Counted from the first letter of the stretch, positions 13,517-19,500 are shown. The stretch: DNA of 64,000 nucleotides from Hormiphora californensis (GCA_020137815.1 CM035355.1:8370001-8434000); one strand, 5' to 3'. Made by a program: numbers and translations. Notes: generated by a model not told the origin, from the sequence alone.

Positions 13517-16500
13517 TCAGAGCCCCTTGTTGTAGTAGACTAGGGACCCATTGGGTGTGCAGGTATCTTCTAGTTTAGAGACGCACATGGAACAGGTCTG
13601 TGGGAAGCAAGCCACTGCCAGAGGTATACCAAGGTAGAGGCCCAGAGTTGAGAGGATAACAGTAACAGGGAGACGGGATTTGGGGAACCTGAGATATGTA
13701 TGGGAGAGATATTCACAGTGGGGAACTATAATATCTGGGAGGACTAGAGATATCTGGGGGACTAGAGAGATATCTGGGGGACTAGAGAGAGATAACTAGG
13801 GGTTAGGTGCTGTATTATTGTTCTCGGCTGAGAGGAAAAAAGAATGCACGGTATGTTCTTAGCAACGTTTGCAAGGTGTGTGTGAACAAAAGGACTGGGA
13901 GTTAGACTCCTTGTACAATGTCCTTGAGGGATGGGAGATTTCCATCCCTGAATAATGCATGAACTTGTATTAGATAGGAGGGGAGATCTCACTACTGTTA
14001 TAATGGTATGAAGGGATGATCTCCTAGTAGGCTAGAGGGTCTACTACGATCACCCACTGGCATGGGGTGGATATAACAGTGATAGTACTAAATAAACTAA
14101 AATTACAGAATATGTCAAGTTATACAGTTCATGCAATTTTAGATCATTTACCCTGTTTCTAATACCCCAGCCCCTCTAGCAATCCCCCCCCCCAACAACT
14201 ACCCCCCCCCCCCCCCCAACAACTACCCCCCCCCCCCCAGCACTACTACACGAGGTCTCTCACACCGACACAATGTCCCCTTTAAATATAACTCCGACTG
14301 TGTGCAACTATATAAAGCTCTTTCTCACGATACAATAAGAACGCAAAACAATAGCTATTTGGTGTAGTATACAGAACCATACCTCTCTCTTCTCTTTCTC
14401 CCCCATCATTCTCTCCCTTCCTCTCCCCTCTTTTCCTCTCTTCCTCTCTGAACAATACATGAAGAACAGTAAACCCTTGCATGGAACTTTCCTGGAAATG
14501 GAATTTCTTCATTTTTGAACTCTTTTGTTTTCTCTGATCATACTAATTATAATTACTTAAATTTTACTTACTTCCCACTCGTCTCTACCTCAAATAACTT
14601 CTCCTACTCTCCCATTACATTCCATATCTCTCACTAGACACCTTCTCAAGACTCCACTACATGCAGCCTCCTTATATCAAACACACACGCCAACAACTGA
14701 TCACTACACGCTGCTGCACTAAAGTGATGAATTGAACCACACAACACTGTAGAAGGTTTATACAGATCGGATGATGGGGGAGCTCTGTAAAACGCAGAGA
14801 GTGTGCAGAGGTATTATACAGATGAGCTATAGGAGAGAGTGTACCATCATAATATAAACTGTGTTAGAAGTCAGTCTGAAGTTTAAAAGGTGTGCTGAGT
14901 GAGTGTTATACGGGATGAACATACATCACAACTCAGAGGGGAAACTAGTGAGATGTGTGTGAAGCTGTCAGGCCAATGCTCTGACATGTGTGAAGTGTGG
15001 TGGTATCAAGAGAATGTGTAAAAGAATAGGTTGATTGATAGACAAAGTCAAAGCGTATAAAAGAAAGATGTTTCCCTCCCTCTTTCTTTATCTCTCTCTC
15101 TATCTCGCTCCTAGGACTTGAAAGAGTAAACGTAGCTGCTATATTTGTTATATATTAGGCTTTATGAGAGGCTTTATGAGGATAAGATGGTATTATTACT
15201 TGGAAAACGTGCACCTTCTGTATCGGCAGTGATTCATCAGTGAGATTGGAAAATCAGTGCAAAGAGGGGGATTAGAGAAGGAAAGAAAGAAAGAGAGAGA
15301 GAGAGAGAGGAGAGAGAGAGAGAGAGAGAGAGAGAGATAGAGAGGGAGAGAGAGAGAGAGGAGATAGAGAGAGAGATAGAGATCGATATAGAGCGCGAGG
15401 AGAGCAGAGAGAGAAGAGAGAGAGAGAGAGAGAAGGAACTGCGATGACGGTCGAAGGATGCTTTCTTAGGATCCAGAGGACGGAGAGGTACTTAAATTGC
15501 AACACGAGAACCGGTTGATCGATATGTGGAAGGCTAAACCGGTTCATGGCAGGTTCCTGCAACAGTTAGAGGAGGGCGGGTGTTCTCTGAATGAAACTTG
15601 GTCCTGGCTCCTTAAACAGAGCATGCCAAAGAATACAGAAGCAGTCATATTTGCTGCTCAGGACCAGGCTCTACCAACTAATTGGTTACGAGCAATCATT
15701 CAGAGAGCGGCTGATACTTCTCCGCTGTGCAGAATCTGTCGTGAACACAATGAATCGGTGGAGCACATACTTAGCAATTGCCAAAAGCTAGCTAACTCTG
15801 AATATAAACAACGGCATGATCGAGTTGCGGCTGCGATACATTGGGGTATGTGTATCGATTCTGGGTTCGAGACTACCACTCCTTGGTTTTTCATTATGCA
15901 GAAAAGGTACTAGAGAATGAACGCTATAAGATCTTATGGGACTTCCTTATCCAATGTGACAGAACTATACAGGCCTGTAAAACCTGATTTGGTGCTTGTT
16001 GACAAACGGAAGAAGGAAGCGATTATCGTGGATGTGGCTGTGCCAAAAGAACGGCTTGTTGCATATCGAGAAATCGAAAAAGGTTCAGAAGTACCCAGGA
16101 ACTCCGGAGAGAAATCCAGAGCATCTGGGGGTTATCTAAGGTAACGGTCGTGCCTATAGTAATAGGCACGCTCGGCGGTGTAACGGATAAACTCCCAGAG
16201 TATCTATCCCGGTTGACCAAACGCATCCTCGTTCTTCCCAGTTGCAGAAACTGTCCTACTTCGCATCCTCTAATATTCTGAGGAATTTTCCTTGACCATG
16301 TAAAATTGTTATTTTGTAGTCTAAGTTAAGTTTTAGGCACAGAGGATTGTAATAACTATTTCCCTGTCCGCTTTCAGTTCCACTTTTCCTAGTGACGTCA
16401 ATCCTCTGCACCCATATGTTTTAATTTTTCCGGAGCCCAAGAGAGTGGTTTAGGCAGGTAGCTTCTCGCTCGCTCCCCTTTCGTTCTCTAAACCTGTCGT

Positions 16501-19500
16501 TCCCTTCTTGGGCTCCTCTCTAGCTCTAGACTTCTTTATGTTTATATTGTGCCAACCGACTTCAGTGTATTTAGGGCCTATATCGTTATGTCCATCTAGT
16601 GGCTGTGGTAGTTTAAGTTAAGCTTTGGGCACAGTGGGTTGTAATAACTATGCCCCCTTTCCGCTTTCAGTTTCCACTTCCTAGTGACGTCAATCCCCTG
16701 TGCCCACTTGTATTTGTTTACGGAGCCCAAGAAAGCGGTTTAGGCAGGTAGCTACCTCGCTTCCCTTTCTTTCTCTAAACCTGTCCGTTCCCTTCCCCTG
16801 GGCTCCACCCTAGCGTTAGACTTCTTTATGTTTCGATGTTATCTGACCATTGTTGGGTATTCGCTATGAGCGGCTGTGCGTAGTTTAAAGGTAGGATATG
16901 GGCACAGTGGGCTGTAATATCTCCCTGTTCACTCTTAGCTCACTTTCTCATAGTAACGTCAACCCCATGTGCCCACATGTTTACTTTACGGGGCACAAGA
17001 GAGTGGTTTAGGCAGGTCGTCTCCTCTCCGCTCCCCTGTCCCCTGGGTACGGGTGCAGATCTCGGGTCCTTTCTCTCCTAAACCTGCTGTTCCCCTAGCT
17101 CTTGTGCCCCTCCCTAGATGTAGAGTTTTCATTTTGTGTGTCCCTATGTTTATTAAATATTTTGTGCCATTTTATGTACTCATAATGGCGGGGTAATATC
17201 CTATTTAACCGAGTTCATTATCATTTTGCTACCCTTATATCTCCCCGCCCTTCTGGGTTCCCGTTGTTATCTTTATTCAGGTACCCCCTTTTTCCTTAGG
17301 TGTGACAATGCATCCGGAATTAGGGGATCTTACCTGTCCGAGGCGGGCTCACGCCCGCCGTCGGATAGTGCGTGTATTCGATAGAGAGAGAGAGAGAGAG
17401 AAAGAGAGAGAGAGAGAGAGAGAGAGAGAGAGAGAGAGAGAGAGAGAGAGAGAGAGAGAGAGAGAGAGAGAGAGAGAGAGATAAAGATGAGTCATGGGAT
17501 GCAACTGGAAGACTGAACTAATTATAGTTTTAAGTAATTGCAGGGGGGTTATCAGAAGTATACTGATTCAGAACGTGTTATCGGGACAAGGAACGGGGTA
17601 GCAGTAGTAAGGAAGTAAGTGATGATGATGAGAAACAGGGATCATACCAGAATGAATACAATGATCAGTTGATTTGTTCAACGGAAAAAGCACTGCGAGA
17701 TGATGATCCAGTAATAATTGCAATTGAAACAAAGTAACACAAGGCACTCTATCACTATCTATGGGCCCTACTGAATTATAGTCCCAGATCTAATATCATT
17801 AGTGGGGGGTTGATGCACCTACTGCAGAGCAATCAAGGAAGTTTAGTGCCCCACTCATTTCGCGACTTATAATATACGAGAGTCTGATAGAGAGAGGGAA
17901 ATATAGCGTGTGTGTCACAGTGGCATGATCTCTTGAGTCTTGAGACAATCTACTGTATATAGTAGGGTGTGAGGCAGGGTGTGAGGCGGCTGCAACCCGG
18001 TGAAAGATGTGTTCTTTCAACTGGCAAGCAAAACAACAAACAGTAGCAATATCAGTATCTGATATGACGGTAGTCCTTCTATATGACTTCCAAAGTCTTA
18101 CAGATCTACTTTGAAGATTATTACCATCACAAGCATCATCATGGGGCTGGGGGGAGCTGGTATGTCATATTGGGAAGTTCAGATATGGCAAATTGAGGGT
18201 TTCTGAGAAAGTGAAGGAGCAATTAATAGTTTCACAGTGGAAGACGGTGGGGTTATGTCGGGGCAAGATTAATAGTTTACCAGGAGATGAAACTGCAAGT
18301 AATTCCTAATCAGTATCTCACTCTCACACTCTCCCTCTCGCTTTCTATCTCTTTATCTATCTCTCTCACTCTCTCACTCTCTCACTCTCTCTCTCTCTCC
18401 TCCTCCCCTCTTCCCCCTCCCTTTCTTCTCTCCTCCCCCTCTCCCCTCTCCCTCCCTTTTTTTTCTATCTCCCTTCCCTCTTTTTTTTCCCTCGCTTCTA
18501 GGGTTCATTTCGCCTACTCCGTTTTAAATTTTCCTCACTAAGGATTAAAAAAAAAATTGGGTGGAAAGGGAAATAGAAAAGAAGAGAGAAGAACCAAAAG
18601 GGCCCCCCGGGGGGGAAAATAAAGGGTTTTTAGGGGGTTTGGGCCCCGGGGGCCCTTTTGGGGGTGGGGGGTTTCCCCCTTTTTGGGGTTTTTGGGGGGG
18701 GGGGGGGTTTTTTGGGGGGCCCCCCCCTTTTTTTTTTTTTTTCTTTTTTTTGGGTTTTCCCCTTTTTTTTTTTTCTTTTTTTTTTTTTTCCTTTTTGGGG
18801 GGGGGCCCCCCCGGGGGGGCCCCCTTTTTTTCCCCCCCCCCCCCCCCCCCGGGGCCCCCCCCCCCCCCCTCCCTTTTCCCGGCCTGACTGGTCGAAGCTG
18901 GAAAGATGGTTTGCCTGGTAGGGTAGGTAAAGGAAATGATTGTAAGGGAAAAAATAAAAATTAGGGGTTTAAAAAGGAATATAATAGAATTAAAAATAAA
19001 AACTATTATAGGGAATATACCCTTTTTCCAAATGATGATAATTTTAATAATGACTTTTTATAAATTTTCTTTATTTAAAATTTTGTTTAAAATTTTCCAA
19101 TTATAAAATTGTTGGGAAATTTCTTTAATATTTTTTAAAGGGTAACAACGTCATGGATTACTTCGAAAATAAAAATTTACTAAAATTGTTGCAAATTTGC
19201 CGCCATTAACAAGGGAAAGGGGAAATTTTAAGGGGGGGGGGGAAAAAAAAGGAAATAAAAGCAACCAGGTGAGTTTCTTTTTAGGAAGAATAAGATTCCA
19301 GGCATAAGAAGGGGTTTAAAAGGTAGTTAACTTTTTAAATTAATCTGGAGGGCCCAAACCGCGTAAAGAAAAGGAAAAAAGAGGATTAAAGAGGGTTTAA
19401 AAACTTGCGTGAAAATGGTCCTTTATATTAAATTTTATAAGTGACAGTTGAAAGGGATTAGGTTTTTAAAGTCTTAAAAGGGGGGGTGGGAAATTTAAAA

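What the first reader, a model, noticed from the sequence alone, without database searches (positions are those of the whole stretch)
16316..17128. Triplicated, covarying, probably pseudoknotted RNA module in the 3' UTR of an R4/Dong-like retrotransposon
Seen in three diverged copies (period ~270-290 nt). Domain 1 stem: CAGAGGATTG/CAATCCTCTG, GGGCACAGtGGGTTG/CAATCCcCTGTGCCC, GGGCACA.TGGG/CCCATGTGCCC, enclosing conserved TAATA and TAGTRACGT. A U-rich linker follows. Domain 2 outer stem GGAGCCCA/TGGGCTCC changes to GGGGCACA/TGTGCCCC in copy 3 (two compensatory pairs); inner stem GGTTTAG/CTAAACC is invariant and competes with GCAGGT/ACCTGY. An 8-bp cross-domain pairing survives in all copies through covariation and G-U pairs: CCGCTTTC(16368)/GAGAGTGG(16441), CCGCTTTC(16661)/GAAAGCGG(16731), TCACTCTT(16929)/GAGAGTGG(16999). 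AGTYTA/TAGACT can close copies 1-2. G-U pairs favour the sense strand. It matches no hammerhead, HDV or twister core I can recognise. Inference: a selected, possibly undescribed RNA structure (ribozyme, nuclease-resistant or stability element, ORF-protein binding array, or processed small RNA).
Basis: partly seen in the sequence, partly recalled or inferred. Interest (0 to 1): 0.82.

Follow-up and report, generated by a model that had tools for sequence, protein, structure and literature searches.

The report
Triplicated RNA hairpins in retrotransposon tail
The untranslated tail of a jumping gene that inserts only into (AG)n repeats holds three diverged tandem copies of a two-hairpin RNA fold whose stems were kept by matching mutations. 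The fold is real and probably selected, but it is confined to one small element family and its function is unknown.

Summary
Window 16316-17139 contains three tandem modules (spacing 292 and about 270 nt; M1-M2 86% identical, M3 about 74% to either). They lie in the 1.08-kb 3' UTR of a 5'-truncated restriction-like-endonuclease (RLE, R2-supergroup) retrotransposon inserted in an (AG)n microsatellite. All nine loci of this family in the genome carry the same triplet.

Each module has two hairpin domains that fold far better than shuffled sequence (z -3.4 to -5.7). Stems and internal loops are 70-100% invariant; apical loops and linkers are 18-50% invariant. The domain-2 outer stem carries two true compensatory pair changes in every copy. 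Conserved, covarying helices exceed column-shuffle expectation (P about 0.002-0.02). The proposed cross-domain 8-bp pairing is 98.9% kept but is only suggestive statistically.

No Rfam family matches, including ribozymes and the R2 3' UTR element. The abundant sister (AG)n-targeting family lacks the modules and shares only a covarying terminal hairpin. The modules are therefore accessory, not the core reverse-transcription signal.

The scan noted the same module at another locus (s1-875090).

Verdict: a real, probably selected, family-specific structured 3' UTR repeat of moderate interest.

The parts
15284..15433 (+). (AG)n microsatellite upstream of the truncated element (target tract)
   Evidence: TRF period 2, 76.5 copies. 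The sequence was read.
15439..16301 (+). 3' end of the retrotransposon ORF. It is 5'-truncated and frameshifted in this copy, and encodes the CCHC zinc knuckle and the RLE nuclease motif KPDLVLVDKRKKEAIIVDVAVP. The stop codon is at 16299-16301.
   Evidence: 96.2% identical to full-length copy L017 from its position 6678. zf-RVT hit. R2-protein RLE alignment. ORF list.
16302..17382 (+). Whole 3' UTR (1,081 nt)
   Evidence: It runs from the stop codon to the (AG)n junction. Eight other genomic copies align over it at 79-95% identity.
16316..16545 (+). Module 1 (a spacer follows to 16607). Domain 1 is 16335-16413 and domain 2 is 16432-16516. The cross-domain arms are 16368-16375 and 16441-16448.
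   Evidence: Covariance-model hit at 252 bits.
16608..16835 (+). Module 2 (a spacer follows to 16880). Domain 1 is 16627-16705 and domain 2 is 16722-16806. The cross-domain arms are 16661-16668 and 16731-16738.
   Evidence: Covariance-model hit at 238 bits.
16881..17139 (+). Module 3. Domain 1 is 16900-16974. Domain 2 is 16990-17110 and contains a 32-nt extra hairpin in its apical loop. The cross-domain arms are 16929-16936 and 16999-17006. This copy has about 8% private changes.
   Evidence: Covariance-model hit at 195 bits.
17178..17258 (+). Further inverted repeat (GGCGGGG / CCCCGCC) in the unique part of the 3' UTR
   Evidence: Inverted repeat I5, 22-nt arms, 77% complementary. The region is conserved among copies.
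17296..17382 (+). Conserved 3'-terminal region with stem-loop 17338-17364 (loop UCAC). It is the only part of the 3' UTR shared with the sister (AG)n-targeting family and is the likely reverse-transcriptase recognition and priming region.
   Evidence: The flanks are the same in both families (GGGGAUYUWACC and GUGCGUGUA) and the stem sequence is different. RNAalifold finds 27 pairs, 12 of them with both-side changes.
17383..17481 (+). (AG)n microsatellite downstream (target tract and 3' tail)
   Evidence: TRF period 2, 49.5 copies, 97% matches. Every copy of both families ends in GAGAGAG.

Best explanation
The modules are a family-specific, tandemly triplicated cis-RNA structure in the sense transcript of an (AG)n-microsatellite-targeting RLE (R2-supergroup) non-LTR retrotransposon.

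Anatomy. Each roughly 230-nt module folds into two domains:
- Domain 1 is a 15-bp stem. It has an invariant 5x5 internal loop (UAAUA / GACGU), a 4-bp inner stem and a variable loop of about 35 nt.
- Domain 2 is a 10-12-bp outer stem. It encloses the invariant GGUUUAGGCAGGU, a variable pyrimidine-rich loop and CUAAACCUG.
- A loop-to-domain-2 8-bp contact is possible.

What is shown. The fold exists in all three paralogs and in all genomic copies. Its stems were preserved during about 14-26% divergence, partly by compensatory changes.

What is inferred. Selection acted on base pairing in the active (master) lineage. The modules are an accessory layer upstream of the real priming signal, which is the terminal stem-loop plus (GA)n tail shared with the sister family. 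They most likely act as repeated binding sites that load the element's own protein, or a host factor, onto its RNA for RNP assembly, cis-preference or stability.

I put about 0.5 on 'selected sense-strand RNA structure' and about 0.25-0.3 on the protein-scaffold mechanism specifically.
For: Triplet present in all nine loci and nowhere else in the genome:
- BLAST found 15 places.
- The covariance model found 28 hits, all in those loci apart from one not-fetched hit at G000:C3.

Folding:
- Thermodynamic z-scores are -3.4 to -5.7 per domain.
- RNAalifold on the three paralogs gives z about -10 against column shuffles.

Conservation and covariation:
- Stems and internal loops are 70-100% invariant; apical loops and linkers are 18-50% invariant and carry the indels.
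- The domain-2 outer stem shows A-U to G-C and C-G to A-U in all nine module-3 copies. Domain-1 pair 31/94 goes A-U, G-U, G-C.
- 91.6-95.1% of cells are paired, versus 27-52% when partners are slid.
Five double-sided changes were never reached in 500 shuffles.
- When substitution patterns are permuted among stem columns, 11.7 broken cells are expected (4 observed) and 0.5 double changes are expected (4 observed).

Subfamily and strand evidence:
- The older subfamily copy L009 differs almost only in loops: 3 of 192 stem cells versus 46 of 306 others.
- Private mutations of individual insertions mostly break pairs (25 break, 14 keep), as expected if selection acts only before insertion.
- G.U pairs favour the sense strand.

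Precedent:
- R2 proteins recognise structured 3' UTR RNA for target-primed reverse transcription (PMC12503042, PMC11371274).
Against: - There are effectively only three independent paralog lineages plus one subfamily, and no second species could be examined.
- The helices were chosen on the same sequences that were then tested, so one search is biased. The unbiased test gives only P about 0.002-0.02.
- The two strongest stems are strand-symmetric.
- In module 3 both arms of the domain-2 outer stem became more like the domain-1 arms (GGGCACA / TGTGCCC). Arm-to-arm conversion or template switching could therefore mimic compensation.
- The sister family has 40 or more copies and many intact ORFs of about 1,230 aa. 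It has a 3' UTR of only about 410 nt and no module. This family has about nine copies, so the modules confer no obvious advantage.
- No binding, probing or expression data exist.
Confidence: 0.5

Rival explanations
1. Neutral passenger. A hairpin-rich stretch just after the stop codon was tandemly duplicated twice. The stems are simply inherited, and the few compensatory changes arose by chance, by conversion between similar arms or by template switching during reverse transcription. The modules have no function.
For: - Tandem duplication is common in UTRs; the sister 3' UTR has its own small tandem repeat.
- The repeat unit includes the spacers and begins right at the stop codon (D9, D11).
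- There are only three lineages.
- Module 3's outer-stem arms converge on the domain-1 arm sequence.
- The sister family thrives without the modules.
- The cross-domain helix tolerates most transitions by wobble, so its conservation is weak evidence (P 0.05-0.08).
Against: - Loops and linkers have diverged to 18-50% invariant with many indels, while stems and internal loops stay 70-100% invariant.
- Double-sided changes exceed all 500 shuffles.
- Differences in the older subfamily L009 avoid stems.
- All copies keep all three modules.
Confidence: 0.3
2. The modules are themselves the primary template-recognition signal that the element's reverse transcriptase needs to start target-primed reverse transcription, as the R2 3' UTR is.
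For: R2-type proteins bind their structured 3' UTR (PMC12503042, PMC11371274). The modules are structured, lie in the 3' UTR, and are retained in 5'-truncated copies.
Against: - They lie 240-1,070 nt from the 3' end.
- The sister family, whose protein is 67% identical in the C-terminal part, lacks them.
- Between the two families only the last 85 nt or so are conserved, with a covarying stem-loop.
- Severely truncated old copies keep only part of module 3 plus the tail.
Confidence: 0.08
3. DNA-level or antisense element. The roughly 280-bp monomers act as promoter or enhancer units, by analogy with mouse L1 5' monomers (own knowledge), or as cruciform-forming inverted repeats. The palindromic TGACGTCA would be a transcription-factor site.
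For: The two main stems are equally good on both strands. TGACGTCA is present in modules 1 and 2.
Against: - The position at the 3' end cannot drive the element's own transcription.
- Module 3 has TAACGTCA.
- Maintaining complementarity over arms 50-120 nt apart is not needed for factor binding.
- G.U pairs in four helices would be C.A mismatches on the other strand.
Confidence: 0.07
4. Catalytic or processed RNA: a self-cleaving ribozyme, an exonuclease-resistant element, or a precursor of discrete small RNAs.
For: Only the general features: a compact conserved fold with invariant internal-loop nucleotides and a possible pseudoknot.
Against: - There was no hit to any ribozyme family or any other Rfam family at gathering score.
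- A permissive scan found nothing below E = 0.6.
- Domain 1 has a loop of about 49 nt and is not miRNA-like.
- By inspection there is no U-rich double-sided internal loop of the triple-helix (ENE) type.
Confidence: 0.04

Closest known systems
R2 retrotransposon 3' UTR RNA (Rfam R2_retro_el; the structured 3' UTR bound by R2 protein for target-primed reverse transcription)
   Same: Both are structured sense-strand RNAs in the 3' UTR of a single-ORF, RLE-bearing, target-specific non-LTR element. In R2 the structure is conserved while the sequence drifts. Vertebrate R2 3' UTRs contain a pseudoknot or a stem-loop (PMC12503042).
   Different: - No match to the Rfam model.
- The modules are triplicated, lie far from the 3' end and are absent from the closest sister family.
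- In this element the R2-like role is better filled by the terminal stem-loop at 17338-17364.
- R2-like 3' UTRs are usually 130-250 nt (PMC7650587 for cockroach R2-like elements), against 1,081 nt here.
3'-terminal stem-loops of 'stringent' LINEs, such as eel UnaL2 and its partner SINE (own knowledge, not checked here)
   Same: A short conserved hairpin next to a simple-repeat tail serves as the reverse-transcriptase recognition site. This matches the terminal hairpin plus (GA)n seen here in two families.
   Different: The resemblance concerns the terminal hairpin, not the triplicated modules that are the finding.
Microsatellite-targeting RLE elements: Dong (TAA)n, Togen (TG)n, some HERO families
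   Same: An RLE-type LINE with insertion specificity for a simple repeat (PMC4640811). Every copy of both families here is flanked by (AG)n.
   Different: The target is (AG)n. Clade membership (R4/Dong versus others) was not tested. No structured triplicated 3' UTR came up for those elements in the papers I searched and read.
Mouse L1 5' UTR monomers (tandem ~200-bp promoter units; own knowledge)
   Same: Tandem repeats of a unit of about 200-290 bp inside a LINE UTR, fixed in the family.
   Different: Those are at the 5' end and act as DNA promoters. These are at the 3' end and show RNA-type conservation: paired stems, compensatory changes and G.U pairs.
ENE triple-helix stabilisation elements of viral, lncRNA and transposon RNAs (own knowledge)
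   Same: A 3'-proximal structured element of a transposon RNA that could interact with a homopurine-rich tail. Domain 2 has a pyrimidine-rich loop and the RNA ends in (GA)n.
   Different: There is no two-sided U- or C/U-rich internal loop flanked by G-C clamps. The pyrimidine loop is the least conserved part (18% invariant) and matches (GA)n over at most about 6 nt.

Membership tests
Any curated Rfam RNA family (including R2_retro_el, HDV-like, hammerhead, twister, pistol and hatchet ribozymes) | Covariance-model score at or above the family's gathering threshold | tested here: not met
   There were 0 hits at gathering score in the whole window. The best permissive hits in 16250-17400 were mir-242_2 at 17.5 bits (threshold 56) and two others with E above 0.8.
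RLE-bearing (R2-supergroup) non-LTR retrotransposon | Reverse-transcriptase domain in a single long ORF | tested here: met
   RVT_1 at E = 3e-24 in the 1,146-aa ORF of full-length copy L017. The best solved relatives are R2 proteins 9nl2, 9nl3 and 9dou, E = 1e-21 to 9e-20. The ORF is split by one frameshift in L017, and its two pieces were searched apart.
RLE-bearing (R2-supergroup) non-LTR retrotransposon | CCHC zinc knuckle and PD-(D/E)xK restriction-like endonuclease located C-terminal to the RT | tested here: met
   zf-RVT hit on window 15497-15910. The segment from CRxC...H...C through KPDLVLVD..IVDV aligns to the RLE region of R2 proteins, residues 1000-1068 of 9nl2 (weak, E = 0.007).
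RLE-bearing (R2-supergroup) non-LTR retrotransposon | Target-specific insertion and 5' truncation | tested here: met
   All copies end in GAGAG.... The window copy lies between two (AG)n tracts. 5'-truncated copies start in module 1, 2 or 3.
R4/Dong clade specifically | Phylogenetic grouping of the RT with named R4 and Dong references | not tested
   No named R4 or Dong reference sequence was available through the tools. Named relatives were only 'reverse transcriptase domain-containing protein' of Anolis (about 44% aa identity) and unnamed insect proteins (34-36%).
LINE 3' template-recognition element (R2 paradigm) | Lies at or next to the 3' end where priming starts | tested here: not met
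   The modules end 243 nt before the 3' junction (17139 versus 17382). The terminal stem-loop at 17338-17364 does meet this feature.
LINE 3' template-recognition element (R2 paradigm) | Structure conserved among related element families | tested here: not met
   The covariance model of the module finds nothing in 26 sister-family loci (best hit E = 5.4). The terminal stem-loop is conserved with covariation.
LINE 3' template-recognition element (R2 paradigm) | Specific binding by the element's protein | not testable with these tools
   This needs EMSA or in vitro reverse-transcription assays.
Evolutionarily conserved structured RNA (general criterion) | Statistically significant covariation on a deep alignment (R-scape-type test) | tested here: inconclusive
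   Only three paralogs plus one subfamily were available. Surrogate tests were positive, but a phylogenetically deep alignment could not be obtained.

The most novel reading that the evidence does not exclude
The two-domain module is an undescribed class of autonomous RNA fold: two hairpins locked by a loop-to-domain contact, with invariant UAAUA/GACGU and GGUUUAGGCAGGU cores. A microsatellite-targeting retrotransposon would use it in triplicate for a specific biochemical task. Candidate tasks are multivalent capture of its own protein, protection of the 3' region from decay, or helping the RNA engage the (GA)n/(CT)n target.
Probability: 0.1. Interest if true: 0.65.

Novelty: new variant of a known kind. 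Interest (0 to 1): 0.4.

Why it matters
Structured 3' UTRs are how R2-type elements pick their own RNA as template, and these proteins are now being engineered for RNA-templated gene insertion.

This element separates two layers. One is a short terminal stem-loop shared between families. The other is a long, repeated, family-specific structured array kept through substantial sequence divergence. If the array proves functional, it would show that RLE elements can add accessory RNA modules for loading, stability or cis-preference, and it would give a compact natural motif to test.

If it is a neutral passenger, it is a useful caution about reading covariation from paralogous repeats. Either way it is a modest, local finding: one family of about nine copies in one genome of about 110 Mb.

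Tried and rejected
Searches for relatives outside this genome:
The contigs behind the related proteins P0002 (85-91% aa identity) and P0003/P0004 (63-69%) could not be fetched, so no cross-species alignment was possible.
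- A DNA pattern built from the two most conserved motifs found nothing in metagenome, genome or viral contigs. These collections hold little eukaryotic DNA, so this says little.
- A protein-guided locus search in metagenomes also found nothing.
- The listing of cluster members gave no names or organisms.

Own-genome limit:
One extra hit (G000:C3:1923422-1923583, 62.6 bits) and the 3' UTRs of more distant families (50-64% aa) could not be inspected. I did not try to get round this.

Ideas tested and dropped:
- Ribozyme or known RNA: rejected on Rfam scans of the window, of the 3' UTR at permissive E-value, and of positions 2000-9001 of locus L017, which cover the full-length element.
- ENE-like triple helix with the (GA)n tail: rejected by inspection, because the pyrimidine loop is the least conserved part.
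- Module homology in the sister 3' UTR: none.
- Strand assignment from folding energy: uninformative, since both strands fold equally well.
- Hidden coding in the modules: only one spurious 75-aa ORF.

Constraints observed:
The frameshifted ORF was searched as two separate pieces and never joined.
- The contig is not human by my reading: a genome of about 110 Mb, (AG)n-rich, with invertebrate-type LINE families.

Full report
**What is in the window.** The finding lies in the 3' part of a 5'-truncated retrotransposon copy.
- Window 15439-17424 is 96.2% identical to positions 6678-8642 of locus L017, which holds a full-length copy elsewhere in the same genome.
- That full-length copy has a 1,146-aa ORF with an RVT_1 domain. 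After one frameshift there is a 235-aa continuation carrying a CCHC knuckle and the motif KPDLVLVDKRKKEAIIVDVAVP. I searched the two pieces apart and did not join them.
- The best solved relatives are R2 retrotransposon proteins. The RT part matches at E = 1e-21, and the C-terminal nuclease part matches weakly at E = 0.007.
- The window copy sits between two (AG)n tracts, 15284-15433 and 17383-17481. Every other copy also ends in GAGAG....

So this is a restriction-like-endonuclease (RLE) LINE that targets (AG)n microsatellites. That kind of target choice is known for RLE elements such as Dong and Togen (PMC4640811). 'R4/Dong' is plausible but untested, because no named references were available. 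The genome is about 110.7 Mb in 45 contigs. It is eukaryotic and I do not take it for human.

**The observation.**
- The ORF stops at 16299-16301 and the 3' UTR runs to 17382.
- It opens with three tandem modules: 16316-16545, 16608-16835 and 16881-17139. Start-to-start spacing is 292 nt and then about 270 nt.
- On a cleaner copy, M1-M2 identity is 86% and M3 is 73-74% identical to either.
- BLAST and a covariance model built from 25 module copies find the same triplet in all nine loci of this family. The only other hit in the genome is one fragment that could not be fetched.

**Is it more than chance?**
- Whole modules fold with z = -4.5, -3.7 and -1.6.
- Single domains from copy L004 fold with z = -3.4 to -5.7.
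- RNAalifold on the three paralogs gives about -65 kcal/mol against -27 +/- 3.6 for column-shuffled alignments. It recovers the domain-1 stem, the domain-2 outer stem and an inner GGC.AGGU/ACCUGY stem.
- I also enumerated every helix of 6 bp or more that pairs in all three paralogs.
- Against 500 column shuffles:
  - three helices of 8 bp or more, P = 0.004;
  - an 8-bp helix with four variable pairs, P = 0.016;
  - a helix with two double-sided changes, P = 0.022;
  - a total of five double-sided changes, never reached.

**Covariation in detail.**
- The strongest case is the domain-2 outer stem. In all nine module-3 copies, A-U becomes G-C and C-G becomes A-U (columns 128/256 and 131/253).
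- Domain-1 pair 31/94 runs A-U (M1), G-U (M2), G-C (M3).
- The cross-domain helix is paired in 98.9% of cells, with one double-sided and four one-sided changes.
- Overall 91.6-95.1% of cells pair, against 27-52% when partners are slid by 1-3 columns.
- I kept the ancestral pairs and permuted the observed substitution patterns among stem columns. This predicts 11.7 broken cells (4 observed) and 0.5 double changes (4 observed), P about 3e-4. That test is optimistic, because the helices were picked on the same data.
- On its own the cross-domain helix reaches only P about 0.02-0.08. Its C-G and G.U pairs tolerate most transitions.

**Pattern of conservation.**
- Stems and internal loops are 70-100% invariant among the paralogs. 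This includes UAAUA/GACGU in domain 1 and the 18-nt AGAGUGGUUUAGGCAGGU.
- The domain-1 apical loop and the linker are 50% invariant.
- The pyrimidine-rich domain-2 loop is 18% invariant, with most columns gapped.
- An older subfamily copy (L009) differs from the rest at 3 of 192 stem cells but 46 of 306 other cells. Counted as events, that is roughly 3 of 25.
- Private mutations of individual insertions break pairs more often than not (25 break, 14 keep). This fits selection acting on the transcribed master lineage and neutral decay after insertion.

The window copy is itself decayed. Comparison with eight other copies shows the following.
- The weak base of module 1's domain-1 stem, and the 'GGGCACA.TGGG/CCCATGTGCCC' register in module 3, come from private mutations.
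- The 'invariant' CTAAACC is CTAAGCC (a G.U pair) in module 3 everywhere else.
- Module 3 of this copy carries about 8% private change, against under 3% in modules 1-2.
- The cross-domain helix, the GGUUUAG/CUAAACC stem and the outer-stem extension compete for the same bases.

**Strand.** Folding energies do not discriminate between strands, and the two main stems have one G.U each on either strand. The closing stem, the inner stems and the cross-domain helix together give 14 G.U and 9 broken cells in sense, against 2 and 21 in antisense. Sense RNA is favoured, but by the weaker helices.

**What it is not.**
- No Rfam family reaches its threshold in the window.
- A permissive scan of the 3' UTR gives nothing below E = 0.6.
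- A scan of positions 2000-9001 of locus L017, which cover the full-length element, gives only low-complexity miRNA noise on the (AG)n tract.
- So there is no support for a hammerhead, HDV-like, twister or other ribozyme, nor for the R2 3' UTR family.

**Context that changes the interpretation.**
- The genome holds a far more abundant sister family. It is about 67% identical in the C-terminal 186 aa, has 40 or more hits, and many hits have intact ORFs of about 1,230 aa.
- It also ends in (AG)n, but its 3' UTR is only about 410 nt.
- It has no module by motif search or by covariance model.
- The two families share only the last 85 nt or so. The flanks are conserved (GGGGAUYUWACC and GUGCGUGUA). 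Between them is a stem-loop whose stem sequence is completely different in the two families and varies compensatorily among sister subfamilies.
- RNAalifold finds 27 pairs there, 12 of them with double-sided changes.
- By analogy with R2, whose protein recognises its structured 3' UTR and primes on the nicked target (PMC12503042, PMC11371274), this terminal stem-loop plus the (GA)n tail is the likely core signal.
- The triplicated modules are therefore an accessory, family-specific addition. They make this 3' UTR several-fold longer than those reported for R2-like elements (132-241 bp in PMC7650587).

**Most likely mechanism.**
- Shown: the fold, its triplication in every copy, and its preservation through divergence.
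- Inferred: selection for pairing in the sense transcript, with a role as repeated binding sites for RNP loading, cis-preference or stability. The invariant internal-loop sequences suggest sequence-specific recognition.
- Main rival: neutral inheritance of hairpins in a tandem duplication. Apparent compensation could then come from chance or from conversion between the similar domain-1 and domain-2 arms. Module 3's outer stem became GGGCACA/TGTGCCC-like, as in domain 1.
- DNA-level roles and catalytic or processed-RNA roles are possible but unsupported.

**Limits.**
- Pattern and protein scans of the metagenome, genome and viral collections were blank.
- All inference therefore rests on three paralogs, nine loci and one subfamily in one genome.
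- The scan noted the same module at another locus of this genome (s1-875090). It also noted the (GA)n-targeting families elsewhere (s1-875039, s1-875006).

**Verdict.** The interpretation as a selected RNA structure is partly supported (about 0.5). Function is unknown. I class it as a new variant of a known kind (structured LINE 3' UTR RNA), of moderate interest.

Noticed in passing
window 17296-17382; L028:2385-2470; L026, L031, L034, L036, L052: A 3'-terminal stem-loop is shared by two (AG)n-targeting LINE families. Position, loop (UCAC/UUAC) and flanks are the same, while the stem sequences are entirely different, with compensatory variants among sister subfamilies (for example G-C, A.C and A-U at one pair). 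It is the probable reverse-transcriptase recognition element.
   Followed up: partly
L026-L052 (G000, many contigs): There is a sister (AG)n-targeting RLE family with 40 or more copies, many with intact ORFs of about 1,230 aa, so it is probably active. Its 3' UTR is about 410 nt and contains a C-run and a small 24-nt tandem repeat.
   Followed up: partly
L005 (minus strand, about 200 nt from the family's 3' end); L004:3669-3792: A second retrotransposon 3' end lies in the same microsatellite tract. In L005 it belongs to the sister family; in L004 it is a degenerate copy of the same family. These are repeated hits into one (AG)n tract.
   Followed up: no
window 16881-17139: Module 3 of the window copy carries about 8% private changes, against under 3% in modules 1-2 of the same copy. 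One change is GGACCC to GGGTCC, where AC is replaced by its reverse complement GT. This could be a template-switch-type mutation or a recombinant origin.
   Followed up: no
window 16393-16400 and 16685-16692: A perfect palindromic TGACGTCA (the cAMP-response-element consensus) lies in domain 1 of modules 1 and 2. Module 3 has TAACGTCA. It may be coincidental.
   Followed up: no
L017:3545-4500 (N-terminal 320 aa of the ORF): Two similar tryptophan-spaced segments (WSEADNICLL...W...W and WSHDMITLLIQLHW...W...W) are separated by a proline- and serine-rich linker. They look like duplicated Myb/SANT-like DNA-binding repeats. Pfam reported no domain there.
   Followed up: no
G000:C3:1923422-1923583 (minus strand): A solitary covariance-model hit (62.6 bits, E = 2.7e-9) lies outside the known loci of the family.
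   Followed up: no
L009/L011 (G000:C1:20895-22474): This copy has about 800 nt inserted between module 1 and module 2. Its modules differ from the other copies almost only in loops, which suggests an older subfamily.
   Followed up: partly
L010:about 1440-1500: A run of N lies directly 5' of a truncated module 3. It is masked or withheld sequence.
   Followed up: no
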